Of a stretch of 64,000 bases of DNA, positions 115 through 62,153 are shown piece by piece (the stretch's first letter is position 1; every line of letters starts with the position of its first letter). Source of the DNA: Podarcis erhardii. Its lineage: Eukaryota. The DNA lies in assembly GCA_964252035.1 (NCBI GenBank), contig OZ176212.1. One strand, written 5' to 3'. Both the position numbers and the translations under genes were made by a program. The notes under the pieces are model-generated. The model was not told the origin of the DNA. It was given only the letters and a program-made list of their open reading frames with translations, and searched no databases.

Positions 115-1566
115 TATGTACCGGGTGAGTCTTTTAAAAGAGGCCCCGTGGAACATGTGTACTCTGTATCCACAGGGTCTCTTTTAAAGGACTCGCCCTG
201 TATTTTTGTGGTTTTATGCTGTAAACCACCCTGTGATCCTTGGATGAAGGGAGGTATAAAAATCAAACCAATAAACAAAAACTGAAACCCTCTGAGGGGC
301 ACATGCCAGTGGTGGCCATGGCCAAAGCAAAACGGGTATGGCTGCATTACCTCCATCCCACCCCATCCTCTCTCTTGCCAGAGCAGTTATACACATACAG
401 ATTTTGTTATTAGGCAGCTGGGGCTGATGCGAATACTAGTTCAAAATGTCTGGAGGGCACCCAGTTAGGGAAGGCCATTGCCTTTTGGCCTAGTAGCTTT
501 TGAGATCCCACATGCATATTTCCAGCTAAAGTCAGAAACAGAATGCTGGTCTAGAGAGTTCTTTGGTGCATCTAGACTACAGTTGCATGGACACCGTACA
601 TTTTTAAAAGTACACACATACCCCCAGAATCCTGGGAACTGTCGCTTACTATAATTCACAGCACCCTTAACAAACTTGCTGGGTTTGTTTTGGGTGGGGA
701 AAATGTGCTTTAAATGTATGGCTGTGTACTAGACATTCTACGTGGGTGTAATCCTGCCCATTTTGGGGTGCCCCCGCCCCCTTCTGTTTCAGCCTGCCCA
801 CCTCTGGCATGCAGACCTTGAAAGAGTAGCCATGAGGGAAGGAGGCCCTTGGGGTGAATCGTGTCCCTGCCACCTTCAGATCTAGAGCCAGAGATACTGT
901 ACATGGGAGACTTTTTCAACCATTAATTTTATGAGCTGATCACCAACTTTCAGCCTGGCCTACGTCATAGAGTTATGAAAGAGGTGGTGAGAAGAGAACC
1001 AAATCTTTTGCCCCGAGTTTGTCCTTGAAGGAAGGGCAGGAGAAAACGGTACTTTAGATTAGAATAATGTTCTGACCTAGAACAACTCTGGTTTTTTAAT
1101 TTTTTTGGGTAACCTTTAAACCTGGCTCTCCTCCTTTTGCAAACCAGCATCTCCACCTTTGGCTTTGCTAAATTAAGGGCTTGCAAGACAGTGTTCCTCA
1201 ACATTTTTGAGGACGAGCCAGTTCTCATGCACAGACTTGTTTTCATGCAGAAGAGATTTTGGCTTCCCAAATTCCATGAACGGAGCAGGGGAGGATTCAG
1301 CAACATAGGCACAGCCTCAAATAGTGTGGTCCAGTTTGCACCTGTGATCTACGGCAGGAATGGGGAACCTTTGGTCTCCCACTTGTTCCTGAACTACAGC
1401 TCCCATCAGCCCTAGCAGGCATGGCCAATGGTCAGGGATGGTGGAAATTGCAGTTTAGTAACATCTGGAGGGCCAAAGGTTTCTTGCACCTGATGTAGGG
1501 CTATACGCTTTAATACATCTAATTTATAGCATTAGTTACAGGTTAAAATGTGTCCTTCCACTAAAC

Positions 1567-1702
1567 TGGTGTTTCTCAAACTTGGATCTCTAGCTGTTTT
1601 GGGATCACAGTTCCCATCATCCCTTCCCACTGGTCTTGCTAGCTAGGGATGATGGGAGTTGTAGTCCAAAAACAGATGGAGACCCAAGTTTGGGAAGCGC
1701 TG
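1567..1702. mobile_element. About 135-bp palindromic MITE (CCCATCATCCC...GGGATGATGGG)
   Basis: Near whole-length inverted repeat; related degenerate copies near 400-465, 1364-1490, 37027-37085 and 37630-37735. Confidence 0.65.
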
Positions 1703-3056
1703 CACTAAGCTGTGGAACAGGCGGCAAATGCTTTGGGGTAGGGCTAGTCTACTCATGGTCTCTGGGCCCAGCCTGACTCCCATGTCTCCAGCTCAGAAGG
1801 AAAGGAGAAGGAGATGAGCTGATGCATTAGGGACAAGGCGGCAATTTGGAAGAGAGCGTGTGTGTACATACTTCCAGTGAGTCCTTAGCTCTCGTCTAAA
1901 AAGTGACCCATCACCAAAACTAGTTGCTAACCAAGGCCTGAGAGCAGGGATAGGCAACTACTACATGCCTATGAGTTGTATCCAGCATCAAAATAGTTCT
2001 AGCCAACCCATGCAATGGGTGGGGAGTGATGTGACCTGCTAACATTTAAGCAACATGTTGTAACGTTTTTGCTTGCAACGAGGAAAAGGCATATAACCGT
2101 CCGTCCTTATTTCTCAGGGCAACTCCCAACTCTCTGGACTTAGTCTTGTCTTTGGTTATTTACTATCTCTAGTTTCACCTCCTCAAATGCTTGAGTCAGC
2201 TGTGTTCTTGTTCTTCAGCAAATTTAGGGAATGTGTGGCCCTGCAGATCTTCTTTGACTCCCGCTGCCAACAGTACCAGGGTCAGGGATGCTGGGAGTTA
2301 TATTTTGCCAGTATCTGCAAGGTTCTTTAGCTAGGTCTGTAGACACTAAAGCCCCTGAGGGTCAAACTTGGTGTGATGTTCCTTGCACAGTGCTCTTGCT
2401 TCTTCTCCATATGTCAAATGTTGGCGGGTACGAAGATTATTTATAAAAGATTTTTTTCAGGAAGTAGAGAGCCCCCAGTATAAGCTTCTCTTTGTGGTTT
2501 TGCATGTGATGCCTGAGCATGTGACTCATAGAATCAGAGAACTGTAGAGTTGCAAGGGACACCGAGGACCATCTAGTACAACCCCCTACAACCTCCATCC
2601 AATTTGAAAGCATACCAGACCCTGCTTAGCTTTGCAAATGTGCTGGCTGTTTTATTGCTGTACCACTGTTCTGTACTTCATGATTTCATAATTTTACAAT
2701 TTTGTGATGATTTTGTTGAACGTCATCTTATTATTTTTTTTAGTGAGTTGGAGGGTTACAAATATTCTTATAAAATAAAAATATGTGATCTGTAACTGTG
2801 AGGTCCTTTCTGCTAAATTGGGGGAGAGGGAATAGCTTTATAATGGGGTCAGCTTGGGAAACTAGACTAAAATATTTCTCCCTGTTGTTCTGGCTGACTT
2901 TCATGGGGCAGCTTTCAAGTACGGTATCTGTCTGATACCTGCAGTATGAAGCCCATTCTGCTATCTCATTCCCCCTTACTTTGGCACACATTGTACATGC
3001 AGGCAGCTTGGCCTCTGTAACGGGGGACAATGAACAGCACTTTATGGAGAAGTGTA

Positions 3057-3297
3057 CAGTGGTACCTTGGGTTAAGTACTTAATTCGTTCCGGAGGTCTG
3101 TACTTAACCTGAAACTGTTCTGAACCTGAAGCACCACTTTAGCTAATGGGCCTCCTGCTGCCGCCGCGCCGCCGGAGCCCGATTTCTGTTCTTATCCTGA
3201 AGCAAAGTTCTTAACCTGAAGCACTATTTCTGGGTTAGCGGAGTCTGTAACCTGAAGCGTATGTAACCTGAAGCGTATGTAACCCGAGGTACCACTG
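3057..3297. mobile_element. Tc1/mariner-pogo-type MITE, family A (TIR CAGTGGTACCTCGGGTTA, TA target)
   Basis: TIRs at both ends, TA flanks, about 240 bp. Confidence 0.85.
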
Positions 3298-3544
3298 TAC
3301 TTACTTTTCTCTGTCCTGTATCTTTGTCACTTTCCACTTAAAATCAACATCCGTGCATCTATTAAATTTTGGTCTTTTCATCACACAGCTGCATTTTGAA
3401 GTTGTTTTTTTAAAAAAGCTATTTCTATTCCTTATCTATTCCCCAGTAAAGATTAAGTGAAAATGTTAAAGATGCCCTTTTCTCCTGGCTAAAGGTAGCA
3501 GATGGTGTTTATTTGGTAAATGTCAAGTCATCCAATGGGAGCCA

Positions 3545-3830
3545 TGAGCTAGAGGTTTATAAAATTAGGTATGGAGTATAGAGAAAGTGGATAGAGGGAA
3601 GTCCCGGCCCCCCCAGCCCCCAGTCTCAAAATTCTAAGGTAAAACTCTGGGTCACCAAATGAAATTGATGGGCAGGTCATTCAGGGCAGGCAAAATAAAA
3701 ATTTACTTCATAGGACATCGGTTAATTTATGTTCACTGCCGCAAGATGTGACAATAGCCTTAGGCAATTTTTAAAATGGGATTAGATAACTTTACAGAGA
3801 GTAGTCTTAACCAATGGCTATCAGCCATGA
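3545..3830 (+). mobile_element. CR1 LINE 3' fragment, degenerate
   Basis: AGAGGTTTATAAAATT...AGAGAAAGTGGATAGAG...GGATTAGATAA...ATGGCTATCAGCCATG pattern. Confidence 0.55.
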
Positions 3831-17253: not shown

Positions 17254-18077
17254 CAGTGGCGTAGCGTGGGGGGTGCAAGGGGTGCCAGCCGCACCGGGCG
17301 CAACATTTTTGGGGGCGCACTCGGAGCTCTCTGCCCCTACCTGGTCCTGGCTCACTCTCTCTCTCACAGTGCTGGCTGTGCGAATCTGATCCGAGCTGCC
17401 GGGTCGCCGCCCACTGTGGAGGGGGAGGGTGCCAGGCGTGCATTGCGGAGCGGAGAGAGAGCGAGGGAGGGACTATCTGGGGGAGGGAAAATGCAGCGGC
17501 CGCCCAGCGCAGAGCTGAGCGCAGGAGAGAACTACATCCGACCAGCCCAGTTTTGGAGGGAAGGTGTTAGTTGCGGCGGAGCCCTGGCGCCCCGGGAGGC
17601 TGGCCGGGCCGGTAATGGGGCTGGCCGGTGGCGCCGCTGCCATCCTGCGGACAAAAGGGCTGCCGCCCCCGGCCGAGCCCCCCCCCCCCCGCGAAACCAG
17701 GAGCAGCTCTCTGGTGCTCGAGGGCTTCGCAGGCCCTTCATCTCCCCTCCATTGGCGCCTCAGCCCCCAGCCCTGCCTGCGCGGCTCCTGCGTCTGGGGG
17801 CGCGCTCGCGCGGATGGGGTGCCGCTCCCCGCTTGCAAATGGTGCCCGTAAAGTCACATCAGAGACGCCCCCGGGACCCAGTTGCTGCCTTCTTCCCCGC
17901 CATGTGATTAAGCCTCGCACTACTTTGTGGCAGTGGTGTAGCGTGGGGGGTGCAGGGGGGGCCGGCCGCACCGGCCGCAACATCTGGGGGTTAGGGTTAG
18001 GGGGCGCAAATCCACGGGTTAGGGGGCGCAAATTACTTGCCTTGCCCCGGGTGCTGACAACCCACGCTACGCCACTG
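17254..18077. mobile_element. Composite GC-rich non-autonomous hAT element (824 bp)
   Basis: Perfect 17-bp TIR CAGTGGCGTAGCGTGGG, perfect 8-bp TSD ATTCTGAA; internal second copy of the left end at 17931. Confidence 0.88.
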
Positions 18078-20194
18078 ATTCTGAATTGTTTGCAAGTGAG
18101 GTTAGATGACATTGCATCAAAGCAAGTGTTATCCCTCACTTTCCGGTGCATTTTCCCATCACTTTCCTCATTGCAAAGAACTCTGACCTTTGGGGGAAGA
18201 AGGTTTGCTCTGCAAGACCTCCAAATCAACTATAATTGTGCAACCTGCAATTGCAGGGATGTGATTGCATCCTTCCCCAAAATGATGAGAGTCTGGAAGC
18301 ACCAATTCACCCAAGCAAATCAGGATGAATGCTTAACAAATAGGTTGACTGGATGAGCCCTAAGTTTTCTTTGTCTGGTTTGTGAGCAATAATGAACATA
18401 TTTGAAGATGGTGATTATTGAAATGTTCCTTCATATTTAGTCCCAATGGCTTTATTCTGTGGTTATGCATGATTTTCTCAGTCAAACAGTTCTGATGTCT
18501 TTTCAAGTCTGTAATAGTAACTTTGATAACCAGTGACATGGGTTTGAAACTAGAGCCACTGTAGCTCAAAGTGCACTGGGTAGGACTCACTGAAAGGCAT
18601 CATACTCAATACTAAATTTCCTGGTTTTCTGTTGCTTTTGGGTTTGTATAGTCTTTAGATTTGCTGCCTCCCTTTTCTACACGTTAAGTAGTGAGGTGAA
18701 ATCCAGTTCCCACCCAACATCTTGTCACCTCTTTGTTAATCTAAGGGGTTGAGTTGACCTCACTTGCAGATCTTTGTGGGAACTTTAAGGCCCTCCTCAG
18801 AGACTCACCCCACCACCCACCCCAGGCCCCATGTTCCTTATATTTCTCTCAATTTAGGCGCTGGTGTCGCACCCCAACCCCTGTCACCATTGCTAAGGCT
18901 CCAGGGGGAAATAGGCCTGTTGTCTAGCAACAAGCCAGGAAGGGGTTGGGGAGCACTTTGTGACAGAAAGGGGACTGCTAAATGTTTCCCGTCTCTATTT
19001 GTAAAGGAGCTTAAAAATGGAGGCACAAGACATATGGTTTTCCCTTCCACATTTTCATCAGGCTGAAATATGCTTGGCCCCAGTCAGTCTAAATCTCGGC
19101 CTAGCCTCTCTCCCCTTGAACTGGCAAAATGGTTGGCCAAAAAGCATAGAGTGGAGAGAAGAAGGTACATGTGAATGGTAGCCAGTAACCTCAAATTGCT
19201 GCATCCCTGTCAAGTAGTGCTCCTTTGTCTTTTAAGAGCTACATGAAATGCAGAAATTCAACAGAAGTAGACCTTCCCAGTGTCCATATTTTCCAGGGAT
19301 GTCCCTCATTTAGATAAGACATCCCAGTTTCTGATTTGATCCCAGAATGTCCAACTTTTCCTTAGGGTGTCCCTATTTTTACTGGAGAAATGTTGGAAGG
19401 TAGGGAGTTATCCGGCCCCCAAGCCATCTGAAGACAATCCTGTATAGCAAAGTTTTTTTAAAAATTTTTTAATGTTTAATTATCTTTTTATATATGTTGG
19501 AAGCTGCCCAGAGTGGCTGGGGTAATGCAGGAAGATGTATGGGGGTATAAATAGTAAAATTATGGAATGGGACACCCCTGTTTTCACTGGAGAAGTGTTG
19601 GAGGGTATGCAGATGCAGCCAGAGCCCTCAGTTCAGGGGGCCCTCAAGACAGTGCTACTTGTAGGCCTTGCCCTAGTTAGAGTGGTATGGGCTACATTTG
19701 TAGTCCTGTTAGAATGGTAAAATCTGAATTTGTTGTGGATTCCCTGCATTCCGAATTGGCACAAGCTCTTCTTGGTGTCCTTCTACCTGCTGATAGCAGA
19801 CTGCAAGCTATTGTAATTAGAAACTGACTTAGAGCAGACATGTCAGTGCTGGGAAAGCAAGGTATGATCAGAAATGCCTACCTGCTGTGTTGATCGCAGT
19901 GGGTCTCAGGTCATGACATTCACCTGGGTCCCATTTAATGACACCCCAGGTTATCAAAACATGGCGGACAGCCACTTTGGATGGGAGCCGAGGTTTGCTT
20001 ACATTAAAGAGTTTCAGTGCCACCCACCCAAGTGATGGGGATTTCCCTAATTTCATCTGTGGAAAAACCCTGCTAGAAAGAGTGACAACTCTAAAACCAT
20101 CTGCAGCAGCATGACCAGTGCACCTCAGAGGTCTGTTTTGTTTCTCTCTGTTGCATGGTGAGCACAAGTTCACACTGTTGTATAACAAGTGCCG

Positions 20195-20974: not shown

Positions 20975-21579
20975 TATAAGATCAGAAGTCCTTGGTACAG
21001 ATTAACTTCCTTGAGCCACATATACTCTCTGGGTAACCTTAGCCATTCACTGTTTACTCAGACTCAGCCCTCCCCTCGTATATAATGGATAATTCAAATC
21101 TCACCTTCCAGGGCTATGGGTAGAATCACTGCAAATAATTTATGTGAAGTGTACTGAATGCTTGACACACTATATAAAAACTACTGCATGAAGCTGCCTT
21201 CATGTTTAAAAAGCCCTCCAGTGGTATCATGTTGGCACTGATTTGTCAATCCAGCCATACAGCTTGATGAATGGAGAAAAACAAGGGGTACATAGGAAAT
21301 TGACTTGCATGTTTTTATGACCTGAAAGGGATCTCTTGCTCATCTGGGGAGCAACAAAGATAGAAAATAAATAGAGTACAATAAAATAGCTAGCTGTTGG
21401 CCATCAGTATACTTAAATTCCCAGGCCCGATCTCTGTTTCAAATGTGGCTGGTTTCCTATTTGCTTGTGTTGATTGCCTCTTTTCCATCTGTCTTTTCTG
21501 CACTTCCAAGAGGCCTGCTGAGCCAGAACAAGAAGAGAAGGAATCATCTCATTGGGGAATGTATGGGTTGAAGGTGTGC

Positions 21580-21644
21580 TCAACAAGCAGGTATTTCAGA
21601 TACAACTCTTTTGGGAAACAGGTGGTACTGCAGATAGGTAGGCT
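21580..21644 (-). CDS. APOH-like exon 8, C-terminal tail EPTYLQYHLFPKRVVSEIPAC*
   Basis: Acceptor CTTTCTTCTTACAG. The terminal Cys supplies the sixth domain V cysteine, as in beta2GPI. Stop TGA at 21582-21580. Confidence 0.88.
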
Positions 21645-22815
21645 CTGTAAGAAGAAAGAGAAGGGAATCAGTAAAGCTGTTTGCAATGAGGGTTGGAATT
21701 TAATGAAAATGGACCCTCTTGACTATGTATGGTGTCCCCCATCCCTCAAACAGGGGGTGGTCAAATCCTCTGTGAAGCTAGCAGAATATCTAAAATAGGA
21801 ATACTAAGATTTTATGCTATGCATTTCCCAATCCCATCTCAAGCTCTTTGATCAGAAACGAACGGTTCTATAATTGCGGTTAATTACTCAAGTGTACTTC
21901 GGTTCCTTTGCGTGCTGATTGCACAATTTTGGTGTTAGAGGGATGAATTTTTTTTTATATACTTGTCAGACTTCAAGTTCGTTTTAATGAGGAACTGAAC
22001 TTCTCCACAATGAAATCTGGAAGTGGAGCCCCAAATCGAGGACAGTGCCTGGAATATGGCACATACCGCGCCAGTCATGAGCTCAATGTTCTGAGATATA
22101 TTGCAAGAGAGACTAGCTTGTGGAGACCTGCCTCCCAAGAGCATAAAGCAATAATATTCGTAACAGTTCCAGTCTCCTGCCCCCAGTCTACCAAAACTTA
22201 ACACCCAATGTTGTTTTGTGCAGGGTTGTTTTCTGTCTCACCATCGTAGCAGTCGGGCATCTTCAACACACCATCGAAACACTGGCTGTCGGCCGTAAAA
22301 CTGCAGGTCTTGTTCTCACTACGGCAGAAAAATGTGACAATTTCTCCATGATGAACCAGACCATCAGGGATCTCATAGACCCAGAGCTTACGCCCTTGGT
22401 AGATCATCCGGCTTCTCTTGGCAGTGATGGGACAGCGGGCTGGTAAGGGTAAGAAACAAAGCCTGTTAAGTATGGTTGACAGACCCATTGGCTTTTCACC
22501 ATCTGGAACCTCAAAGACAATGGGGATGCTGGTATGGAATATAATGGCTGGGTTGATAAAGTAATTGTGAGTATGTAAAAAGCAGTGGGGATTAGGAGGA
22601 AAGTACCTCTGCAGTAGGGTAGTTGGGACCAGTTTCCATTCTCCAGGCAAACCACTCGATTAGAGCCATCTAAGAGGAAGTCCTTGTTACACAAGTAATA
22701 GATGACAGTTCCCACGGGGTATTCAGACTGGTGCACAGCAACCAGGGTTGCTTCAGCAATATTGGGGGGTCGGGAACAGGTCACAGCTAGGGAGAGAAAA
22801 AGAAAAGTATTCTAA

Positions 22816-22867
<52 letters not shown>

Positions 22868-25800
22868 GGATGGAAAGGATGTACAGATAGAGAACTCATG
22901 GATGGGTGTTTATTTGGATTTATGAACAGAGAAATAAATATGGAGTGAAGTATAGAAGGATGACGGATGCTTTATTGGGTAGGTCAGCATATGTATGTGT
23001 GAATGGATGAATATATCAGCCTATTGGTTGGTAAAGGCAGAAGTTGCTTGGCCTTTGACTCAGAACTTATAATGTACTTCCAGGTGGAGTTTTTTTCTGG
23101 TTTATTTGAGGTATATGTGGTAAAATGTGTGGATCTGTGTTACCAAGGAATAGAACACTACTGAAGACTAATCAAGCGGCCAGAAAGAAGCTCGGTCCTC
23201 TACCCCAATAATCTTGACTACTTACGGTGGCAGGTTGGGGCTGCATGTGACCATTCCTCATTCTCTTGGCATAAAAGAGAACTGGGTCCCTCTAGGCGAT
23301 ATCTGTGAGGTAGGAAGAAGAAGAAATCAGAAGGAAGTATTCAGTAGCTTTCCGCTTGAGGCCAGATATGAGATAGTATTTATTAGATTTATATTTTGAG
23401 GCAGACAATGTTTTTATGCTTTTTAAAAACAGCTGACTGACTTTTTTATTGTTCTACCTCGTTTTATGAAATTGTAACATTATATATATGTTCAGACACT
23501 CTCAGTGGTGTTTTTGCATGAGAATGGTATGATAAAGGTAAAGGTAAAGGACCCCTGACAGTTAAGTCCAGTCGTGAATGACTCTGGGGTTGTGGTGCTC
23601 ATCTCGCTTTACTGGCTGAGGGAGCCGACGTTTGTCCACAGACAGTTTTTCTGGGTCATGTGGCCAGCATGACTAAGCTGCTTCTGGCGAAACCAAAGCA
23701 GCGCATGAAAATGCTGTTTACCTTCCCCCTGGAGCAGTGCCTATTTATCTACTTGCACTTAGACGTGCTTTCGAACTGCTAGGTTGGCAGGAGCTGGGAC
23801 CAAGCAATGGGAGCTCACCCCGTTGCAGGGATTCAAACCGCTGAACTTCCAATCGGCAAGCCCTAGGCTCAGTGGTTTAGACCACAGCGCCACAAATAAA
23901 ATAAAATGGGATGTGTATGCTGATCAGCGGGTTGGAGTAAGTGATGGAGTTGAGGATAGTTTTATTTACATCATTTCTAACACGCTCTTTAGCCCAGAAA
24001 GACTCTTTGAGCCACTTAGAACAAATCAGTTCTAAGACAGTCCCTGCCCTCAGGCTCACAACCTGAACAACTGACTTACCCATAGTCACACCAGTAGTGC
24101 ACTTCCCTTCCTGTGTTGTAAGGGCCCCCTTCATGGGATCCATTTTCGATCTCTGGTGGAGATTTGCAGTGGGATGGTGGGTTACGAGCATCTGATAAAG
24201 AAGAGGAAGGGGAAGAAAGAAAATGCTTGATAAGTCTGTATCCTTGGTGCATTAGACCAATTGTTGGGTTTTGTTTGTCATCTGGTGGAGGCACTGTAGT
24301 GGTGGAGGGTTATCAGTGGCTGTTCTAGATTGAATAAGAGGTGCTTGAGAGCCTGGTCCCTCCTGGTATTGATGACAATGGTAGGAAATGGTTGATTACC
24401 TTCACAGGGTAAAGTGAAGCTCCACTTCGCGTCTCCTTGGCAGCGACTTACTGCCACTTCCTGCCCATCAGCCATTATAAATCCAGGCTTGCATGTCACC
24501 TCCATTAAGTCCCCAAACAGAGTGGATTCCTGGACCAGTTGTGTCTCAGCATTGTCAATTGTCACCGGCCATGCACACCTCAAGCCTTGGAAGAATACAG
24601 AAAGAAAGATGGTGGCTGATGAGAACCCTGAATTTTGTGGGAAAGAGTTGAGCCTGGATTCTCAGGGTCTAGTGAGCCATGTTGGAAGAAGAACTCCTGG
24701 GTTCTTGTGAGGAAACGGAAGGTCTAATGGACAGAAAGAGATGAAAACCAGGAGTTCTGATCTTTTGGGAACTGGCAATCAGGAATATTGAATTTTCTTA
24801 AATGGGGCAAAGGAGGGGTTAAGGAATCTGGAGACCAGGACTCCTCTGGAAAAGGAATAAATGGAAGGCTAGATGCTAGAGCAGGGCTGGGAATACTAGA
24901 AAACAGTTCTTCCCACCTAATGGGATGGTGAGTGTGGGCTAGGTGGTGTTTTGGAGTTATGGGAGCCGGAAGAGGAATGAAACCTGTTTCATAAGGAAAA
25001 ATGAGAGGCTATGACCTAGCATCTTGGGATCATTGCAAGTGGAATGTGATTGGAGATGTGCAGGGAGGAGAGAAGGATCTGGGAATGATTATTTATTAAA
25101 TTTATTGATTTTTTTTAAAAAAAACCAAAGTAACTCAAAGCAACTTTCAATATATAAATAAACACATACATATCTTGAAACTGACATAAATCTTAGGTTC
25201 TTAGGTTCTTCTGGAATGGGGGATGAAACCAGATGGCTGAAGTTTGGAGTTTGGGAATCAGAAGTCTCAAGTTCTCTAAACTGGTTTAAAGGATTTTTTT
25301 CTGGTAACGGAGCACTTCTGAAATCTCTATAAAGTGGCTAGGGCAGAGTTAGGTAGGAAGGACTGGGAAGCATGTAAATGCCTGGATTTTCTGTGAATTT
25401 TCCTGTGTATGGACTAGGTAGTCAAGTTTCTACCTGTAGAAATGCAGCTCATTCCACATTCCCCGTCACATTCACACTTCCTGCTTTTAGAGCATCTGCG
25501 GCGCTCACAGTTCTTCTGGCACGTCTGCCCTGTCAGCATTGTAAAATTCTTCTTCCGCAGTGGACATTTGGGGTCAGTCAGATTCCTGACTGCAAATAGA
25601 AGAAAAGATAAGTGGTTACACAGATACGAGGGAATGAGACCGGGGAAAGAGGCAAGTGATATACAATCGTATTTAAGAGCTACGTCTGTGTGTCTGTAAT
25701 GGGGGAGTCGAAGGTGAAAATACCTTCCTTCCCTTCCCTAACACATAGCTGTCAACGTTTCCCTTTTTTTTAGGGGAAATTCCCTTATTCCGAATAGGAT

Positions 25801-28800
25801 TCCTCACAAGAAAAGGGGAAAGTTGACAGCTATGCCCTAACAATAAGCTCCAAGATGCTTTGTTGCCTCAAACAAAAAATTCAAATAGTGTCTCCTCCTC
25901 TTGAGGCGATAGAAAATATCACAGTAAACTAAATAATTGGCAGTTGGCCATCCTTTAACGTTGTTTTGAAATCTCCCATCTGAGTGGGCTGTCTCATGGT
26001 AGGCCTGGTCCTGCTTTTCCCTGTGGTGAATGAGATAATTTCGGCATCGTGGCTCATTTCCTCCTAGCGAGCTTCTCAAATGTCCCTCAGCTGAACCTAA
26101 TTTTTAAGCTGTGCCTCATTACTCTCGCAATGTCTCTGACTCCTGCCGTGTGCTTGTTTGTTTAGGTTTGTGTACAAGCAGGATGTCAGACTGAACCTAA
26201 ATCTGAACTCAAAAAACCACACAGAACCTTCACCCCCCCAACCAAATTGTAACAGAATAAGAATTATTATCTGTTGAATCTGTTGACGGCTATCAACAAC
26301 AATTGGGTTACCTGTTAGAATATGAACCTAGCTTTTTTTAAAAAAAACAACAACACGCCAAATCTTTTGTTTTTATTATTTTTAAAAATTCAAAACCATT
26401 TAAAAACTGCTTATTATTAAACCAATATTTAAGTGATGTACAACAGAACATAACACCCCCCCCCCAAAAAACCCCAGCATGTTGTGCTAACCCCACTGGC
26501 TCCAATCAGAATGAATCACGATGAGCACATAAAAACAAAATAATATCTGGAGATTTTGGGAAAGATATTTGGGGGCTGCTCAGTGAAGAGAAAGGCTGAC
26601 AGCAGGGAATATCCACTGAGGTGGGAGAGAAGTGAGAGACACAGGCTCCCTGATGCCTTTAGGAAGCCTGAGAGCAAGGGCCCTCTCCCTCCTGTGGTTG
26701 CCACCAACTGGTATTCAGAAGCGTACTGCCTCTGACTGGGGAGGCAGAGTGTGGACTTTGTGGCTTGTAGCCACTGAAAGCCTCTACCTCAGCGGACTTG
26801 TCTAATCCTCTTTAAAAAGCATCCAAGATGGCGGCTATCACTGCCTCGTGTGGCGGCAAATTCTGTAGTTTTACTGTGTATGTACTGTGTGAGGAAGTAC
26901 GTTCTTTTGTCTGTCCTGAATCCTCCAAAATTCAGTTTCATTGGATGTCCATGAGCTCTGGCAGAAGGATTCCCCCCCTTCTCTATCCATGTTCTCCATG
27001 CCATGTGTAATTTCATAAACGTCTAGCCTTTTACTCGCCTCTTCTCTAAACCGAAAAGCCCCAAATGCTGCAACATTCCCGCACTGGGGAGTACAGTGGT
27101 ACCTCGGGTTACATACGCTTCAGGTTACATATGCTTCAGGTTACAGACTCCGCTAACCCAGAAATATTACCTCGGGTTAAGAACTTTGCTTCAGGATGAG
27201 AACAGAAATCGTGCTCTGGTGGCACGGCGGCAGCAGGAGGCCCCATTAGCTAAAGTGGTGCTTCAGGTTAAGAACAGTTTCAGGTTAAGAACGGACCTCC
27301 GGAACGAATTAAGTACTTAACCCGAGGTACCACTGTAGTTGTTCCATCCCTTGATTATTTTGGTTGCGCTTTCCTTAACCTCTTCCAACTCAACAATATC
27401 CTTTTTGAGGTAAGGCAACCAGAACTGTACACAGCATTCCAAATAGGATTTACCCATGGATTTGTGTAACCACTTTATAATATTGGCACTTTCAGTTCCT
27501 TTCCTAATGATTCTTAGCAGCAGCAGCAGCAGCAGCAGAGGCTGGCAGCCGGTGCCACCCCTTGGAAGGCAGACACATGGGGGCTGGCTGAAGGCAACTT
27601 GACCTTGGTGGGGCAGTGCCCCATTCACTCTAATGGGCTGTAGTTCCACCGGCTGTAGTTTCCCAGTCCAAGGTAGACGACATGTTCCAGTCAGGGTTGT
27701 ACTCCCTCTAAAACTCTTATTATCACGTCATTCACTTTCCGAAGCAAGTTGGGTCCATCAGTTACCCTGGTTCTCTTACAGATGACAGAATCACTGGTGG
27801 CCTGAACAAAAGTCCCAGAGTTGTGTTCCCTGTCTGCTAGGCTACCGTATTTTTTTAAAAATAGCCATGAGTCTTGACTGTGTACTTGCAGTCTCAAATG
27901 TGGGGCTGAAATTCCACATATGCGAATGTCGAAAGGCTACTTTGTCACTGGTCCTGATTACGGGAAGGGTTACAAATGGACCAGAAAGAAACTTCTTTGG
28001 CATGCTGTTCCCATAGTTTTAAGAGCCTTTTTGCAAGTGCCAGTGAAATCAGCCAGTGGAACTTTCCACAATATGGAGATAATAAACATTATCACCTGCT
28101 AATTCCTGCAAAACTAATTGTGAGCATGACAGCAGTTGGTAGGGTGTTAATGGGAAGTAACACTCATTTGAAGAGATCTTGAGACTTTGGCTTAAATATA
28201 TTCTGTATGGAAGGGCATGAGGGTTAAAAAGAGGGATATTTAGAGCTTTGTATCTTAAGCAAAATGAACATTTCCTTCCTTTCCAAACTTGAATGAGAAA
28301 AGTTGTGATGCTGGCAATGGCCACCAGGTGGAGAAATATATACTTGGCTTGAAAAGCTGCCTTATACAAGAAATGCTGTCTACCTGTTTATGTCCATACA
28401 TGTTGTTGTTGTTTTTTTTAAAAAATATTTATTTTAATGTTTAGACTGCAACACTCGAAGGTGCCATGTGAGTAGCAATACATCCAAAGGTAACACGCCT
28501 AATTATAGCTGACCCAGAAAGGAAAAAACCTCCAAAATCCATAGCTGGGTTTTGGAAAAAACACCCACCCCAAAGATCCACTTTTATTAGGGCCAACCAA
28601 ATTAAAAAATAATGGCAAGCTTTTACATTCTCCAGAGCTCTGCAACAGGCAAAGTGTTTCACAAAACAGGAAGCAAAGGGACAATGGGAAAGTACAAGGA
28701 AAAGTACAAGAATTAGATTGCATGTTGTAGCTCTAACATCAGCTTGTAAACTCAGTTCCCAAATTATATTGCACCGAGGTACAAATTTTAATGGTCCTGT

Positions 28801-29129
28801 AAGCTAACAAAATTAAAATAAAATGCACAGAATATTGAATAATAAATATATAAAAAGATACTATTATTAAACAGCTTACATTTAATAACATGACTTATGC
28901 AGTCCGTCATGAGGATGGTTTATTTGTGCAGGTAACCTAGCTATGTAGCAGTCAGTGTGCTTACCCTGATGATCTGCAAAGTGAGCCTCAGTTGCCTTGC
29001 TTGCTTTGTATAAGCTAAATTGCAATAGTGCTACATCCATTCTGCAGTCACGTTACTTCACATAGCCCTCTAAATTCAAGAACTAACTTGTGGGGGAGGG
29101 ACAGGAAACCTATTTTCTGGGATTGGTAG

Positions 29130-29166
<37 letters not shown>

Positions 29167-32100
29167 TTTCGTAGATTTTCACGGGTACAGGAATGCAGGT
29201 TTTGGTGTCCTCGGGTGTCTTCCCGTGTAAAAGTTGGGGTGTCTAGGCGACGTTTCGACGAGGTCTCACTCGTCATCTTCAGGCTGGTGCTTTCGGCTTC
29301 TTGTTACTGGAACAGAGCAGGATCTCAGTGTTTGAGTTCCTATAAATACTGTAGAGGGGGTGTGGTGTATAGCCTCCAATGTTCTGGGCAGAGAGGAAGT
29401 TCCCAGGCTAGTGTGCCTTTTCTTCTTTTGTTCCTTAATTACTTGAGAGATATCTTGAGTGATTTCTTGAGTGATATCCTGAGTACCACTTAGGTGGGTC
29501 ATTAGGTGTGGATTAGTTGTTAAAGTCTTTGTGTCTTGACCTCTTGAACTTTGTGAAGAGTTTTCCTGAGAAGATGGCTGTACTGTACTTAGTTGTGCTC
29601 TGGCTTGGCTTCGTGTATAGGGGCGAGCTGTGGTTTTGTGGCTTGTGTCAGCCAGATCTGTGTAGCCAGATCTGTATATGCATGCTTTTAATTGCAGGGG
29701 AAATGTGATATCCTTGAAATAGAAGTGTGAGCTTAAAGAAAGATGTCTGGATCTTTCTCAAACCCATTAATCCTCAGCAACACATTAGTAACAACTGTGT
29801 GCATTAAAAAATTTTTTTTTGACAATTTGCACCATGAGTAGATGGATAGATACATTGATTTAATAATAGACAGAGATAAAATTAGGCATAAAAGCTTGAT
29901 ACTTCCCATTTTAGAAATTGTACACTGGATGGAGAGAGAGAGAGAGAGAGAATATGTGTGGGAATAGAGAGAAGAAAAGTGAATGGAAGTTAGGAAAACA
30001 GCAGAAAGAAAGAAGCCCTACCTGGCAATCCTACACAGTAGGCAGAGAATAAGGTATCTGGTTAGCCACTGTGAGGACAGGATGCTGGACTAAATGGGCC
30101 ACTGGCCTGATCCAGCAAGCTCTTTTTAAGTTCTTATGAGTAAGGGGCTCAGACTTCAGTGAGCTAACTAGATTCCTATTGTAGCTCAGCCCAATTCCAG
30201 TCTCTCTCTTTGTATGCTTGGCTTTTGCTTCAGTTTTCTTTCTATAAAAAGTGTTGAAAGTGACTGCGAGGGAAGGGATTCTGGTTATACATCCTCAGTT
30301 TTAAGACTGCAGAGCCTAGAAATCTAAATATATGCAAGTGTCTTTATGAGGGTAGAGCGTGTTAGGTAAATGGAAAACTATTTGGACACAGGACAGGTCT
30401 GAGAAGGTTAAGAGTCCTGGCGTCTTAAAGTATGTGTCAAAAGCCAACAGATAGTTCAGGATATATAAATTCCACAACTCTGTGGCTCTACAGTTCCTTC
30501 TCACAAAGTGGTGCTTTATACTTCGGGCTGCTTGTATTCTGTGATCCTCTCCAAACACAGAATGAGATCAGAAAAATCTGGCACCCTGAGCCTTTAGTGA
30601 AAAACGCTTTAGGGAAAAGTACAAAGGGGTGAGAGAAAATGAACAGATAATAAAGTGTTCATGGGAAGCTGTCTTATACCAAGTCAGACCATGGTTCATC
30701 TAGTTCAACACTGTCTGCACTAACTGGTAGCAAGTCTCCAGGATTTCAGACTGCTTTCTCTTCTAGCATAGATTGAACCTGGGACCGTCTTCCTGCAAAG
30801 CAGCTGCTCTACCACTGAGCTTATGGCCCTTCCAACCTACTCGTCTTTGGGGGCAGGGGAGAGTATATTATTTTCTCCTGTGTCCTGTTTGAGGCACACA
30901 GCTGGTACAGCTGGGGGTTTTCTGCTCCAAGTGGCTGAGCACTACAGTCAGATCCCCAGAATACTCCAGGACCCCCTGCAACATTGCAGCTGATGCCAGG
31001 ATATATCATTTCGCTGATGGGCCTAACAAAAATTGTTGCTTTAACTATGTTTGGCTTGCTTGTGCCCAGCAGCCTGGATTTATATAAGATTGGAGCTCAA
31101 GTTGCAAATGGGCAGAACGCAAATACAGTGGTACCTCGGGTTACATATGCTCCAGGTTACAGAAACTTTAGGTTACAGACTCTGCTAACCCAGAAATAGT
31201 ACCTCAGGTTAAGAACTTTGCTTCAGGATGAGAACAGAAATTGTGCTCCGGTGGCACAGTGGCAGCGGGAGGCCCCATTAGCTAAAGTGGTACCTCAGGT
31301 TAAGAACAGTTTCAGCTTAAGAACGGATCTCCAGAACAAATTAAGTTCTTAACCTGAGATACCACTGTACAATCTTTCCACAGTGTGTAGAGATGGAGCA
31401 CAGCTCTAGGGCCGGTCCAAGACATTTTTCTCCCTGAGGTAGAATAGCAAATGCTGCCTTCCCTTGTCCCTCCCTCAGCAAGTCAAGAGCTTTGAGTTTT
31501 GTCAGTGGCTGGAAGGTGGAGCGGAACTGGCCCAAGACATTTTGCTGCCTCAGAAGGAGCGGCAGATGGCACATAACACACCTGCCCTGCCAAAGTGAAG
31601 GCACATAGTAGTACCCAAGGCTTGCTTTGGCACATGAGGCAGAAAATCTCTCTCACACGCCTCTCCCAGGAAATGAAAAAGAAATCACAATAATCTAAAT
31701 CACTGTTGTTATTTTAAATCACCATTATTTATTAATTTATACAATCCTTAATGAAAGATAAAAGTCTCCCAAGCAGCTTGCCAAATATAAAAACTAATCA
31801 CACAATTCTGTTGCCCTTTCATGATACCCCAAATCATGACTGCCTCACACTTCCTAATGGTAGAGCCGGCCCAGCATTGCTCACTGCTTAACGTGCTGGA
31901 CGTCCCAGGTTAAACCCCTGTCATCTCCAGTTAAAAGGATCAGCTAGGAGCTGATGGGAAAGACCTCTTTCTGCAGAGCTCCTGCCTGTCAGACAACAGA
32001 GGACTAGATGGATAAATAGCCTGACCTAGTATATGGCACCTACCGACGTTCCTAATATAGCAGCTTGTAAGGAATATGAGGAAGGGGAGGTGAAAAGTCA

Positions 32101-32220
32101 GGTAGAGGGACTGAAAGCAGAAAAGGGGTGAAGTGACTGTGGGGACTCACCTCCCACTTGTCCAGAGCCTTGTGAGAACCAGAGAACCGCCAGCAGTGCC
32201 AGGAAAAGGAGCGAGGACAT
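21580..32220 (-). CDS. Beta-2-glycoprotein 1 (APOH)-like secreted protein, 8 coding exons, 347 aa: complement(join(21580..21644,22242..22439,22607..22786,23226..23302,24080..24191,24400..24585,25434..25589,32151..32220))
   Basis: All seven introns are GT..AG with compatible phases (1,1,1,2,1,1,1). Exon lengths 70+156+186+112+77+180+198+65=1044 nt give one open frame ending in TGA. The translation gives signal peptide, 8-Cys module, 3 CCP domains and a beta2GPI domain V ending in Cys. Symbol left blank because this looks like a paralog, not the APOH ortholog. Confidence 0.9.
22242..22439 (-). CDS. APOH-like exon 7, beta2GPI domain V (ARCPITAKRSRMIYQGRKLW...FFCRSENKTCSFTADSQCFDGVLKMPDCYD)
   Basis: Acceptor TTCTTACCCTTACCAG, donor ATG|GTGAGA, 198 nt. 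Aligns by eye with human beta2GPI domain V (YQG, HGD/HGE, FFC, CS..D.QC.DG motifs). Confidence 0.92.
22607..22786 (-). CDS. APOH-like exon 6, CCP domain (PVTCSRPPNIAEATL...VCLENGNWSQLPYCR)
   Basis: Acceptor TTTTTCTCTCCCTAG, donor GAG|GTACTT, 180 nt, phase 1-1. Confidence 0.92.
22829..22862. repeat. (GT)n microsatellite
   Basis: Direct reading. Confidence 0.9.
23226..23302 (-). CDS. APOH-like exon 5, second half of the split CCP domain (GYRLEGPSSLLCQENEEWSHAAPTCH)
   Basis: Acceptor TTCTTCCTACCTCACAG, donor ACC|GTAAGT, 77 nt, phase 2-1. Confidence 0.9.
23534..23893 (-). mobile_element. Sauria SINE (APOH-like intron 4)
   Basis: Near full-length body with (AAAGGT)n tail. Confidence 0.85.
24080..24191 (-). 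CDS. APOH-like exon 4, first half of a split CCP domain (DARNPPSHCKSPPEIENGSHEGGPYNTGREVHYWCDYG)
   Basis: Acceptor CCTCTTCTTTATCAG, donor TGG|GTAAGT, 112 nt, phase 1-2. Confidence 0.9.
24400..24585 (-). CDS. APOH-like exon 3, CCP/sushi domain (GLRCAWPVTIDNAETQ...SRCQGDAKWSFTLPCE)
   Basis: Acceptor CTGTATTCTTCCAAG, donor AAG|GTAATC, 186 nt, phase 1-1, four Cys plus the conserved Trp. Confidence 0.9.
25434..25589 (-). CDS. APOH-like exon 2, WAP/four-disulfide-core-like module (VRNLTDPKCPLRKKNFTMLTGQTCQKNCERRRCSKSRKCECDGECGMSCIST)
   Basis: Acceptor TCTTTTCTTCTATTTGCAG, donor CAG|GTAGAA, 156 nt, phase 1-1, 8 Cys spaced C-x14-C-x3-C-x4-C-x5-C-x-C-x3-C-x3-C. Not present in the supplied ORF track. 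Confidence 0.85.
26650..27515 (-). mobile_element. CR1 LINE 3' fragment, interrupted by a MITE
   Basis: Reverse translation LHKSMGKSYLECCVQFWLPYLKKDIVELEEVKESATKIIKG resembles the CR1 ORF2 C-terminus. Confidence 0.75.
27094..27335. mobile_element. MITE family A (reverse), inserted into a CR1 fragment
   Basis: TIRs and TA flanks; CR1 sequence on both sides. Confidence 0.85.
29133..29164. repeat. (TA)n microsatellite
   Basis: Direct reading; adjoins the Penelope-like remnant. Confidence 0.9.
29165..29690 (-). mobile_element. Penelope-like retroelement 3' end/pseudo-LTR remnant
   Basis: Minus strand reads ...GTATTTATAG...CCTGAAGATGACGAGTGAGACCTCGTCGAAACGTCG..., the hallmark of PLE termini, followed by a (TA)n tract. 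Boundaries approximate. Confidence 0.65.
29242..29290 (-). ncRNA. Minimal type I hammerhead ribozyme motif
   Basis: GCACCAGC-CUGAAGA-U-GACGAG-UGAGAC-CUCGUC-GAAA-CGUC/GCCUAGA: intact catalytic core, perfect 6-bp stem II, palindromic ACGU stem III, weak stem I. Confidence 0.6.
30661..30832 (-). mobile_element. Squam3-like (MIR/Ther1-related) SINE
   Basis: tRNA-like head AAGGGCCATAAGCTCAGTGGTAGAGCAGCTGC and CORE-like body on the reverse strand. Confidence 0.6.
31126..31367. mobile_element. MITE family A (reverse)
   Basis: TIRs and TA flanks. Confidence 0.85.
31850..32055 (+). mobile_element. Squam3-like SINE, degenerate
   Basis: GTCCCAGGTTAAACCCCTGTCATCTCCAG...CTAGATGGA...ATATGGCA body. Confidence 0.5.
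32151..32220 (-). CDS. APOH-like exon 1, signal peptide MSSLLFLALLAVLWFSQGSGQVG
   Basis: ATG at 32220, hydrophobic core, donor GAG|GTGAGT, phase 1. Confidence 0.85.

Positions 32221-33129: not shown

Positions 33130-62153
<29,024 letters not shown>

What the first reader, a model, noticed from the sequence alone, without database searches (positions are those of the whole stretch)
21580..32220. Intact beta2GPI paralog with a new domain architecture: WAP-like + 3 CCP + domain V
Seen: an uninterrupted 8-exon, 347-aa ORF. Established: human APOH is signal peptide + 4 CCP + domain V, with coding exons 64/177/97/77/189/180/198/56 nt (recalled; they sum correctly to 345 aa). Here the 77, 180 and 198-nt exons and the phase-2 split CCP are retained, the CCP that follows the split domain in APOH (189-nt exon) has no counterpart, and a symmetric phase 1-1 exon encoding an 8-Cys WAP-like module is added at the N-terminus. 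Inference: an exon-shuffled family member absent from mammals; automated annotation would probably label it only as beta-2-glycoprotein 1-like. WAP domains are typically protease inhibitors or antimicrobials, so this may be a plasma or secreted regulator linking protease inhibition with complement or coagulation.
Basis: partly seen in the sequence, partly recalled or inferred. Interest (0 to 1): 0.8.

Follow-up and report, generated by a model that had tools for sequence, protein, structure and literature searches.

The report
Ancient WAP-bearing paralog of beta2-glycoprotein I
This lizard gene is a real, expressed sister gene of the blood protein beta2-glycoprotein I that carries an extra WAP-type module; it is kept from sharks to reptiles, is missing from mammals and birds, sits in databases only under generic names, and no study of it turned up in my searches.

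Summary
On the minus strand, 32220..21580, lie eight GT-AG exons of 70/156/186/112/77/180/198/65 nt. They encode 347 aa with 26 Cys: a signal-like N-terminus, an 8-Cys module, three CCP/Sushi domains (one split in phase 2) and a Sushi_2 domain V.

Transcript contigs from two lizard species and three studies carry every splice joint, including exon 1-2 and 2-3.

The protein differs by 2 aa from Podarcis muralis "beta-2-glycoprotein 1-like". More than 100 orthologs share the architecture, from sharks to squamates. None was found in mammals or birds.

An ML tree separates this clade from true APOH at 100/100 support, and both clades run from shark to tetrapod. Podarcis also has a true APOH on another chromosome, with exons 64/177/97/77/189/180/198/71.

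The gene lies head-to-head with a classical PKC in lizard and alligator.

The 8-Cys module is a WAP domain by orthology: Pfam WAP hits 34 of 42 orthologous modules. All eleven squamate modules tested, this one included, miss the model; they carry a one-residue deletion and a net charge of +4 to +8.

Function is untested, and whether the WAP module was gained or is ancestral stays open.

The scan holds only first-reader notes from this same window, so this gene has not been followed up before.

The parts
32151..32220 (-). Exon 1 (70 nt, ends in phase 1): start codon and a hydrophobic, signal-peptide-like N-terminus
   Evidence: RNA contigs that end at exon 2's acceptor continue with the letters of 32151 onward (loose end at 25591 in X1 and X5).
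25434..25589 (-). Exon 2 (156 nt, symmetric phase 1-1): 8-Cys WAP-derived module, spacing C-x14-C-x3-C-x4-C-x5-C-x-C-x3-C-x3-C
   Evidence: The joint 24584/5|25433/4 is present in X1, X5 and X6. This copy has no Pfam hit. Pfam WAP hits 34 of 42 orthologous modules. The family profile's best PDB match is elafin, E 0.0096.
24400..24585 (-). Exon 3 (186 nt): first CCP/Sushi domain, in the position of APOH CCP1
   Evidence: Pfam Sushi E 1.3e-07. Joints on both sides are seen in RNA. Domain-profile scores are weak (A2 25.5 bits, A1 17.2 bits).
24080..24191 (-). Exon 4 (112 nt): linker plus the first half of the split CCP
   Evidence: Pfam Sushi, profile positions 1-30. Joints 24191|24400 and 23302|24080 are seen in RNA.
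23226..23302 (-). Exon 5 (77 nt, entered in phase 2): second half of the split CCP, counterpart of APOH CCP2
   Evidence: Pfam Sushi, profile positions 33-56. A 77-nt exon is also found in lizard APOH and in the alligator, gar and seabream orthologs. The best domain-profile match is APOH CCP2, at 41 and 49 bits.
22607..22786 (-). Exon 6 (180 nt): third CCP, counterpart of APOH CCP4
   Evidence: Pfam Sushi E 2.9e-12. The best domain-profile match is APOH CCP4, at 57 and 49 bits. Joints are seen in RNA.
22242..22439 (-). Exon 7 (198 nt): main part of domain V (Sushi_2)
   Evidence: Pfam Sushi_2 E 5.7e-26. This exon was the query that recovered the family.
21580..21644 (-). Exon 8 (65 nt coding): conserved C-terminal tail of domain V ending in Cys, then the stop codon; the 3' UTR continues below 21580
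   Evidence: The joint 21644|22242 is present in X5 and X6, and RNA depth continues to 21300. The tail motif is conserved from shark to lizard.
33731..33898 (+). First coding exon of the head-to-head neighbour, a classical protein kinase C (PRKCG-like), about 1.5 kb from exon 1
   Evidence: The same arrangement is seen in P. muralis and alligator.

Best explanation
This is the Podarcis copy of an old jawed-vertebrate gene. It is a duplicate of APOH (beta2-glycoprotein I) that arose before sharks and bony vertebrates split.

It encodes a secreted, disulfide-rich glycoprotein built as signal peptide, WAP-type module, three CCP domains and a beta2GPI-type domain V. The gene is intact, correctly spliced and highly represented in some lizard transcriptomes.

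Relative to APOH it lacks CCP3 and has the WAP exon in front.

Shown here: the gene model, splicing, expression, orthology, paralogy with APOH, synteny with a classical PKC in sauropsids, and no member found in mammals or birds.

Inferred: it works as a soluble beta2GPI-like protein. Domain V and its very conserved aromatic C-terminal tail would dock it on a surface or ligand. The rigid CCP stalk would present the N-terminal WAP module as the effector, either as an inhibitor of trypsin-like proteases or, in squamates where the module is strongly cationic, as a polyanion- or microbe-binding head.

The lysine cluster that gives mammalian beta2GPI its affinity for anionic phospholipid is not conserved. 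The ligand is therefore probably not the same.
For: - Gene model and domains.
- Splicing: all seven splice joints are seen in transcript contigs of organism A (two studies) and organism B. Exon depth is about 1000-3800 against 15-30 in the non-repeat parts of the introns.
- Transcript variants: the four exonic differences I checked against the window are three synonymous changes and one Leu/Met change.
- Species identity: the protein differs by 2 aa from P. muralis XP_028558112.2.
- Orthologs with the same layout occur in sharks, bichir, sturgeon, gar, teleosts, coelacanth, lungfish, amphibians, turtles, crocodilians and squamates.
- Tree: the WAP-type and APOH-type clades split at 100/100 support.
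- A separate true APOH exists in Podarcis and in many other species.
- Shared exon structure. Domain correspondence.
- Pfam WAP is above its gathering score in turtle, lungfish and teleost orthologs and hits 34 of 42 modules. The family profile's best PDB match is elafin.
- The full-length AF2 model has pLDDT 85.5. Its seven best PDB matches are all human beta2GPI, and the CCP4 plus domain V fragment 4JHS fits at TM 0.84 and 2.7 A.
- Domain V keeps six Cys, including the terminal one. That terminal disulfide controls membrane binding in human beta2GPI (PMC8326733).
Against: - No functional data exist.
- The tissue of the expressing samples is hidden by coded run ids. One RNA-seq run of raw reads (X23) had no reads on the exons.
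- The lizard WAP module fails Pfam WAP even at E 10. Folded alone it gave only pLDDT 64 and no structural match.
- The loop that carries the scissile bond in elafin and SLPI (between Cys2 and Cys3; position recalled, not tested) is only three residues long here. Canonical WAP-type inhibition is therefore doubtful.
- In tetrapods the loop that corresponds to the Lys-rich phospholipid site of beta2GPI carries an N-glycosylation sequon. Domain V net charge is only 0 to +3, against +5 in mammalian APOH.
Confidence: 0.9

Rival explanations
1. It is the lizard's true APOH ortholog with a lineage-specific extra exon.
For: Public annotation gives it APOH-type names, and its best PDB structural matches are beta2GPI.
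Against: It falls in the sister clade at 100/100 support. Podarcis lilfordi, raffonei and muralis each have a separate 348-350 aa APOH on a chromosome of about 125 Mb, against about 54-60 Mb for this gene. That APOH has the classical exon set and a DUF4485 (CEP112-like) neighbour. The WAP exon is present from sharks onward.
Confidence: 0.01
2. The WAP-CCP layout is ancestral, as in invertebrate LEV-9 and Hasp (N-terminal WAP followed by CCPs). On this view APOH is the derived copy that lost the WAP exon and gained CCPs, so the reader's 'added by exon shuffling' has the direction reversed.
For: WAP followed by CCPs exists in LEV-9 and Hasp (PMC9083331). NCBI names two orthologs 'protein lev-9-like'. 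By language-model features, the nearest clusters outside the family to the WAP plus CCP part of the turtle ortholog are arthropod Sushi+WAP proteins, score 0.89 with 189 shared features. The WAP exon is already present in the earliest-branching members, the sharks. It is a symmetric phase 1-1 exon, so loss is as easy as gain.
Against: No outgroup with a Sushi_2 domain was found, so polarity cannot be read from the tree. The Atlas score is below the tool's own 0.9 line and may reflect only shared domain types. No direct alignment with LEV-9 or Hasp was made.
Confidence: 0.25
3. In squamates the N-terminal module is a decaying relic: the gene works, but the WAP part has lost its function.
For: All eleven squamate modules tested fail Pfam WAP, whereas all 34 non-squamate modules in the set pass. 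Squamates have lost one residue and the D-x-D motif between Cys3 and Cys4.
Against: All eight Cys, the C-x-C-D-G-x-C-G-x-S-C core and the C-P-x-R motif are retained in every squamate. The module is always spliced in. Its pLDDT is 71-90 in the full-length model. The shift to net charge +4 to +8 is shared by all five squamates measured, which looks like a change of function rather than drift.
Confidence: 0.1
4. It is an extracellular scaffold at synapses or in the matrix, like LEV-9 and Hasp, and not a plasma protein.
For: The order of WAP then CCPs is the same. The neighbour gene is PKC-gamma-like; that PKC-gamma is a neuronal kinase is general knowledge, not tested here.
Against: Very high transcript depth in whole-sample transcriptomes is more typical of a secretory-organ product, though the tissue is not known. 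Domain V is otherwise known only from the plasma protein beta2GPI. [quoted passage not shown]
Confidence: 0.1

Closest known systems
Beta2-glycoprotein I / apolipoprotein H (APOH)
   Same: It has a C-terminal Sushi_2 domain V with six Cys and a terminal Cys, preceded by CCP domains. It shares the phase-2 split CCP and the 77/180/198-nt exons. It lies head-to-head with a classical PKC gene; that human APOH lies beside PRKCA is recalled, not tested. Its best structural matches are beta2GPI.
   Different: It belongs to a separate clade that is as old as jawed vertebrates. It has three CCPs rather than four, with CCP3 missing. It has an N-terminal WAP module. The Lys-rich loop is replaced, with an N-glycan sequon there in tetrapods, and the C-terminal tail is different and far more conserved. 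No member was found in mammals or birds.
WAP four-disulfide-core proteins (elafin, SLPI, WFDC, snake waprins)
   Same: It has eight Cys in WAP-like order. Orthologs pass Pfam WAP, and the family profile aligns to elafin from Cys3 to Cys8.
   Different: One residue is inserted between the normally adjacent Cys5 and Cys6, giving C-x-C. The Cys2-Cys3 loop has only three residues. The squamate copies fall below the Pfam model. The module is fused to CCPs and a domain V rather than standing alone or in WAP tandems.
LEV-9 (C. elegans) and Hasp (Drosophila)
   Same: They are secreted proteins with one WAP domain together with CCP domains; in Hasp the WAP precedes the CCPs (PMC9083331).
   Different: They have 8 to 17 CCPs, no Sushi_2 domain V, and a synaptic receptor-clustering role. 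Homology beyond shared domain types was not shown here.

Membership tests
Beta2-glycoprotein I family (Sushi_2-bearing CCP proteins) | C-terminal Sushi_2 / domain V with six Cys, including a C-terminal Cys | tested here: met
   Pfam PF09014 hits exon 7 at E 5.7e-26. All 24 orthologs examined have six Cys and a terminal Cys. The model fits 4JHS (CCP4 plus domain V) at TM 0.84 and 2.7 A.
Beta2-glycoprotein I family (Sushi_2-bearing CCP proteins) | Shared gene structure: one CCP split in phase 2 with a 77-nt second half, then 180-nt and 198-nt exons | tested here: met
   Lizard APOH has 64/177/97/77/189/180/198/71. This gene has 70/156/186/112/77/180/198/65. The alligator, gar and seabream orthologs share the same core.
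APOH proper (orthologs of human APOH) | Falls in the APOH clade and lies at the APOH locus | tested here: not met
   It falls in the sister clade at 100/100 support. A separate APOH lies beside a DUF4485 (CEP112-like) gene on another chromosome in Podarcis.
APOH proper (orthologs of human APOH) | Four CCP domains before domain V | tested here: not met
   Three Sushi domains are found. CCP3 has no counterpart by domain profiles, and no further CCP exon is in the window.
APOH proper (orthologs of human APOH) | Lys-rich loop (C-K-N-K-E-K-K-C) and hydrophobic L-A-F-W loop for anionic phospholipid binding; this definition is recalled from the beta2GPI literature | tested here: not met
   The loop here is C-R-S-E-N-K-T-C and contains an N-x-T sequon. 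The tail has a different, clade-specific aromatic motif. Domain V net charge is +1, against +5 in mammals.
WAP four-disulfide core domain (PF00095) | Match to the Pfam model at or above the gathering score | tested here: not met
   The window copy has no hit at E 1 or E 10, and ten other squamate copies have none. Orthologs do match: 22-24 bits against a cut-off of 20.8, and 34 of 42 modules at E 0.01 or better, best 9e-09.
WAP four-disulfide core domain (PF00095) | Eight Cys in the WAP order and spacing, with adjacent Cys5-Cys6 | tested here: inconclusive
   Seven of the eight Cys are invariant in 42 orthologous modules and the fourth is kept in at least 90%. However, Cys5 and Cys6 are separated by one residue in the whole family, and the Cys3-Cys4 spacing is 4 rather than 5 in most squamates.
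WAP four-disulfide core domain (PF00095) | WAP fold and disulfide topology | tested here: inconclusive
   Folded alone, the module reached pLDDT 64, with a C-terminal beta-hairpin but no Foldseek or VIA match. In the full-length model the module has pLDDT 71-90 but could not be searched on its own.
WAP four-disulfide core domain (PF00095) | Protease inhibition or antimicrobial activity | not testable with these tools
   This needs recombinant protein.
LEV-9 / Hasp type WAP-CCP proteins | One WAP domain combined with CCP domains in a secreted protein | tested here: met
   The architecture is shown. The description of LEV-9 and Hasp comes from PMC9083331.
LEV-9 / Hasp type WAP-CCP proteins | Sequence homology beyond shared domain types | not tested
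   There is only an Atlas feature lead of 0.89 to arthropod Sushi+WAP clusters. No LEV-9 or Hasp sequence was at hand for an alignment.

The most novel reading that the evidence does not exclude
The APOH family began as a WAP-CCP protein related to invertebrate LEV-9 and Hasp. On this reading the gene found here keeps the ancestral layout and is a major circulating protease-regulating or microbe-binding protein of non-mammalian vertebrates. Mammalian beta2GPI, whose physiological role is still debated, would then be the derived copy that lost the WAP head.
Probability: 0.2. Interest if true: 0.7.

Novelty: new variant of a known kind. Interest (0 to 1): 0.5.

Why it matters
Beta2-glycoprotein I is abundant in plasma and is the main autoantigen of antiphospholipid syndrome, yet its normal role is still argued about.

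A sister gene of the same age as jawed vertebrates offers a natural comparison. It keeps domain V and its redox-sensitive terminal disulfide, but carries a WAP head instead of the CCP3 and Lys-cluster features. It is retained in fish, amphibians and reptiles and was not found in birds or mammals. This should help show which parts of the family's function are ancestral.

It also gives zebrafish and Xenopus workers a second, unstudied family member to knock out. Generic labels such as 'beta-2-glycoprotein 1-like', 'complement factor H-like' and 'lev-9-like' currently hide one coherent orthologous group that deserves its own name.

Tried and rejected
1. A nearer acceptor for the last exon gave 336 aa.

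2. An open frame in intron 1 at 30824-31096 (minus strand) looked faintly like a degenerate CCP1 exon. It has no Pfam hit at E 10 and no tblastn match to the model's CCPs, so I dropped it.

3. The exon-2 peptide alone found nothing in the PDB by sequence. Foldseek and VIA searches of its stand-alone model were also blank.

4. I tried to assign the PKC neighbour to the gamma subtype with PDB sequences. The result was not discriminating, because the PKC-beta full-length chains score highest simply by covering more of the query. The gamma assignment therefore rests on recalled subtype-specific residues and on a MARVEL-domain gene on the other side of the alligator ortholog; I take that gene to be MYADM-like, from memory of the human PRKCG neighbourhood.

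5. I looked for that MARVEL gene in the window and did not find it.

6. PKC is not within 10 kb of the orthologs in gar and seabream, and the catshark and frog look-ups showed no neighbour. The head-to-head pair is therefore shown only for sauropsids.

7. Four literature searches found no paper on this paralog. The library lacks most subscription journals, so this is not proof that none exists.
Full report
**The observation**

The gene lies on the minus strand. I located the exon ends by their flanking sequence and rebuilt the CDS. There are eight exons:

| Exon | Coordinates | Length (nt) |
|---|---|---|
| 1 | 32151-32220 | 70 |
| 2 | 25434-25589 | 156 |
| 3 | 24400-24585 | 186 |
| 4 | 24080-24191 | 112 |
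| 5 | 23226-23302 | 77 |
| 6 | 22607-22786 | 180 |
| 7 | 22242-22439 | 198 |
| 8 | 21580-21644 | 65 |

Every intron is GT-AG. The CDS is 1044 nt and gives 347 aa with 26 Cys.

My first choice of acceptor for the last exon gave 336 aa.

Pfam finds Sushi on exons 3, 4+5 and 6, and Sushi_2 on exon 7 at E 5.7e-26. It finds nothing on the 8-Cys exon 2. tblastn of the model against all 64 kb found no other CCP exon.

**Expression and splicing**

I laid contigs of three runs and raw reads of a fourth on 21300-27299. Runs X1 and X5 are organism A from two studies, and X6 is organism B. Between them they carry all six joints between exons 2 and 8 at exactly the predicted bases, with CT..AC ends on the plus strand.

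At the acceptor of exon 2, the X1 and X5 contigs run on into letters identical to 32151 onward, which is exon 1.

Exon depth is about 1000-3800. In the non-repeat parts of the introns it is about 15-30.

The runs are labelled only 'RNA? (a guess)', but spliced contigs can only come from RNA. The raw-read run X23 had reads only on intronic repeats, so expression is not universal.

The four exonic differences I checked between these transcripts and the window are three synonymous changes plus Leu98Met.

**What the gene is**

An exhaustive HMMER search of 1.84 billion cluster representatives with exon 7 found 82 clusters. They fall into two groups: one 48-83% identical to the query and one 31-42% identical.

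The first group has the same N-terminal 8-Cys module.

A word-indexed search with the turtle member listed 120 relatives, nearly all called 'beta-2-glycoprotein 1-like'. They come from sharks, bichir, sturgeon, gar, many teleosts, coelacanth, lungfish, frogs, salamanders, caecilians, turtles, crocodilians and squamates.

The window protein differs by 2 aa from P. muralis XP_028558112.2 and by 5 aa from the P. lilfordi and P. raffonei proteins. Other labels for the same cluster are 'protein lev-9-like' and 'complement factor H-like'.

**Paralog, not ortholog**

A search with bird APOH returned true APOH from birds, turtles, crocodilians, many squamates, mammals, coelacanth and teleosts. Its lacertid cluster includes 'Apolipoprotein H [Podarcis lilfordi]' and P. 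muralis and P. raffonei APOH on chromosomes of about 125 Mb. The present gene lies on chromosomes of about 54-60 Mb.

An ML tree of 49 sequences (LG+C20+F+G4) splits the WAP-type and APOH-type groups at 100/100 support. Each side contains sharks, ray-finned fishes, lobe-finned fishes and tetrapods in roughly the species order. The duplication is therefore at least as old as crown jawed vertebrates.

One caveat applies. The alignment includes the non-homologous N-terminal columns, which helps the split. The identity gap in domain V alone points the same way.

**Exon and domain correspondence**

I mapped proteins onto their loci:

| Gene | Exon sizes (nt) |
|---|---|
| Lizard APOH | 64/177/97/77/189/180/198/71 |
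| This gene (window) | 70/156/186/112/77/180/198/65 |
| Alligator ortholog | 73/162/186/109/77/180/198/65 |
| Gar ortholog | same 77/180/198 core, WAP exon of 141 nt |
| Seabream ortholog | 77/183/198 core, WAP exon of 135 nt |

Profiles of each APOH CCP, scored against each CCP of the new clade and the reverse, gave these results:

- The split CCP pairs with APOH CCP2, at 41 and 49 bits.
- The last CCP pairs with CCP4, at 57 and 49 bits.
- The first CCP is divergent (A2 25.5 bits, A1 17.2 bits) and is CCP1 only by position.
- CCP3 has no counterpart.

**The 8-Cys module**

Its pattern is C-x14-C-x3-C-x4-C-x5-C-x-C-x3-C-x3-C.

Across 42 orthologous modules, seven of the eight Cys and the core C-x-C-D-G-x-C-G-x-S-C are invariant or nearly so; the fourth Cys is kept in at least 90%.

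Evidence on WAP identity:

- Pfam WAP scores 22-24 bits against a cut-off of 20.8 in the turtle, lungfish and teleost proteins.
- It hits 34 of the 42 modules and is the only family matched.
- The family profile's best PDB matches are elafin (E 0.0096) and, more weakly, SLPI. The alignment needs one inserted residue between the usually adjacent Cys5 and Cys6.
- The window copy and ten other squamate copies get no Pfam hit.

Squamates have lost one residue and the D-x-D motif between Cys3 and Cys4. Their net charge is +4 to +8, against -3 to +3 elsewhere.

Language-model features of the lizard exon point to WAP clusters, but only at a score of 0.79.

Folded alone, the module reached pLDDT 64 and matched nothing. 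Within the full-length model it reaches pLDDT 71-90.

My reading is that it is a WAP domain by descent that was remodelled in squamates.

**Structure**

The full-length model of the P. muralis protein, built with 48 orthologs, has pLDDT 85.5. Its seven best PDB matches are all human beta2GPI, at E down to 1e-23. The CCP4 plus domain V fragment 4JHS superposes at TM 0.84 and 2.7 A.

**Surroundings**

About 1.5 kb upstream, on the other strand, is the first coding exon of a classical PKC. Further C1-domain exons lie at about 57.5 kb and 59.9 kb.

The same head-to-head pair is annotated in P. muralis and in alligator. In alligator a MARVEL-domain gene follows downstream.

From memory, the subtype-specific residues are those of PKC-gamma, and MYADM is PRKCG's neighbour in human. 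The PDB comparison could not settle the subtype.

In gar and seabream no PKC lies within 10 kb. True APOH in Podarcis lies beside a DUF4485 (CEP112-like) gene.

I confirmed that only in part.

**No member found in mammals or birds**

With the turtle query, alligator is 69% identical and amphibians are 58-59% identical. Bird and mammal orthologs would be expected to rank among these, and none appears.

In the exhaustive search, every unnamed WAP-type fragment is closest to a teleost or frog sequence. Every cluster closest to a mammal or bird is APOH-type.

One caveat applies. The PRKCG region of birds may be poorly assembled (from general knowledge, not tested), so a hidden bird copy is not excluded.

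**How it may work (inferred)**

Domain V keeps its six Cys, including the terminal one. In human beta2GPI, the bond that Cys forms acts as a redox switch for membrane binding (PMC8326733).

The Lys-rich loop is replaced. In most tetrapods it carries an N-x-T or N-x-S sequon. Net charge is low.

By contrast the C-terminal tail, a Glu-Pro-Thr-Trp/Tyr...Phe-Pro...Ser-Glu-Ile motif, is almost unchanged from shark to lizard. That suggests a conserved binding site with a ligand different from cardiolipin.

In the WAP module, an Arg three residues after Cys1 is nearly invariant. A Lys or Arg stands two residues after Cys2 in every module listed. Both are candidates for contact with trypsin-like proteases.

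However, the Cys2-Cys3 loop, which holds the scissile bond in elafin and SLPI (recalled, not tested), is only three residues long. Canonical inhibition is therefore uncertain.

I put the identity of the gene at 0.9. Any particular biochemical role rates well below 0.5.

**Novelty**

The sequence is already predicted in public annotation for this genus and for more than 100 species, and Pfam flags WAP in many of them.

Four full-text searches found no paper that describes the clade, its age, its synteny or its loss in mammals and birds.

WAP followed by CCPs is known from LEV-9 and Hasp. Whether that resemblance reflects common descent is the most interesting open point.

Noticed in passing
window 26493-26546 (-), inside intron 1: An 18-aa match (83% identical) to the alternative first exon of NCBI isoforms X2/X3 of the Podarcis orthologs. 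These isoforms replace the usual signal-peptide exon. RNA contig depth is moderate at 26500-26900, but I did not see a joint to exon 2.
   Followed up: partly
P0196 (P. raffonei isoform X3), corresponding to window exon 3 (24400-24585): An annotated isoform skips the first CCP exon, joining the WAP module directly to the split CCP. The listed RNA joints did not show this skip (52 joints were not shown).
   Followed up: no
window 23500-23900 and 27090-27340 (also 31120-31370): Intronic SINE-like repeats have enormous RNA depth and many loose ends in all four runs, including the raw-read run that has nothing on the exons. These are reads from other copies of the repeat, not from this gene.
   Followed up: no
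window 33731-33898, about 57.5 kb and 59821-59940 (+): These are exons of a classical protein kinase C, PRKCG-like by recalled residues. The gene runs away from the APOH-like gene, and its first intron is more than 23 kb.
   Followed up: partly
P0004, lungfish ortholog (Protopterus annectens): The lungfish ortholog has four CCPs because the split-type CCP is tandemly duplicated. This is a lineage-specific expansion within the WAP-type clade.
   Followed up: no
P0006, Xenopus laevis: This X. laevis family member is 208 aa long, has several Cys of the WAP module replaced and lacks the C-terminal tail. It may be a decaying homeolog or a poor gene model.
   Followed up: no
window 17266-18356: A G+C-rich stretch (GC about 0.51 around 16-18 kb) has long overlapping open frames on both strands. 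It looks like a CpG island or the promoter of an unidentified downstream gene. The MARVEL gene that follows the alligator ortholog is not in the window.
   Followed up: no
window 22818-22866 and 29134-29166: A (GT)n microsatellite lies in intron 5 and an (AT)n microsatellite in intron 1. RNA contigs appear cut at the first one.
   Followed up: no
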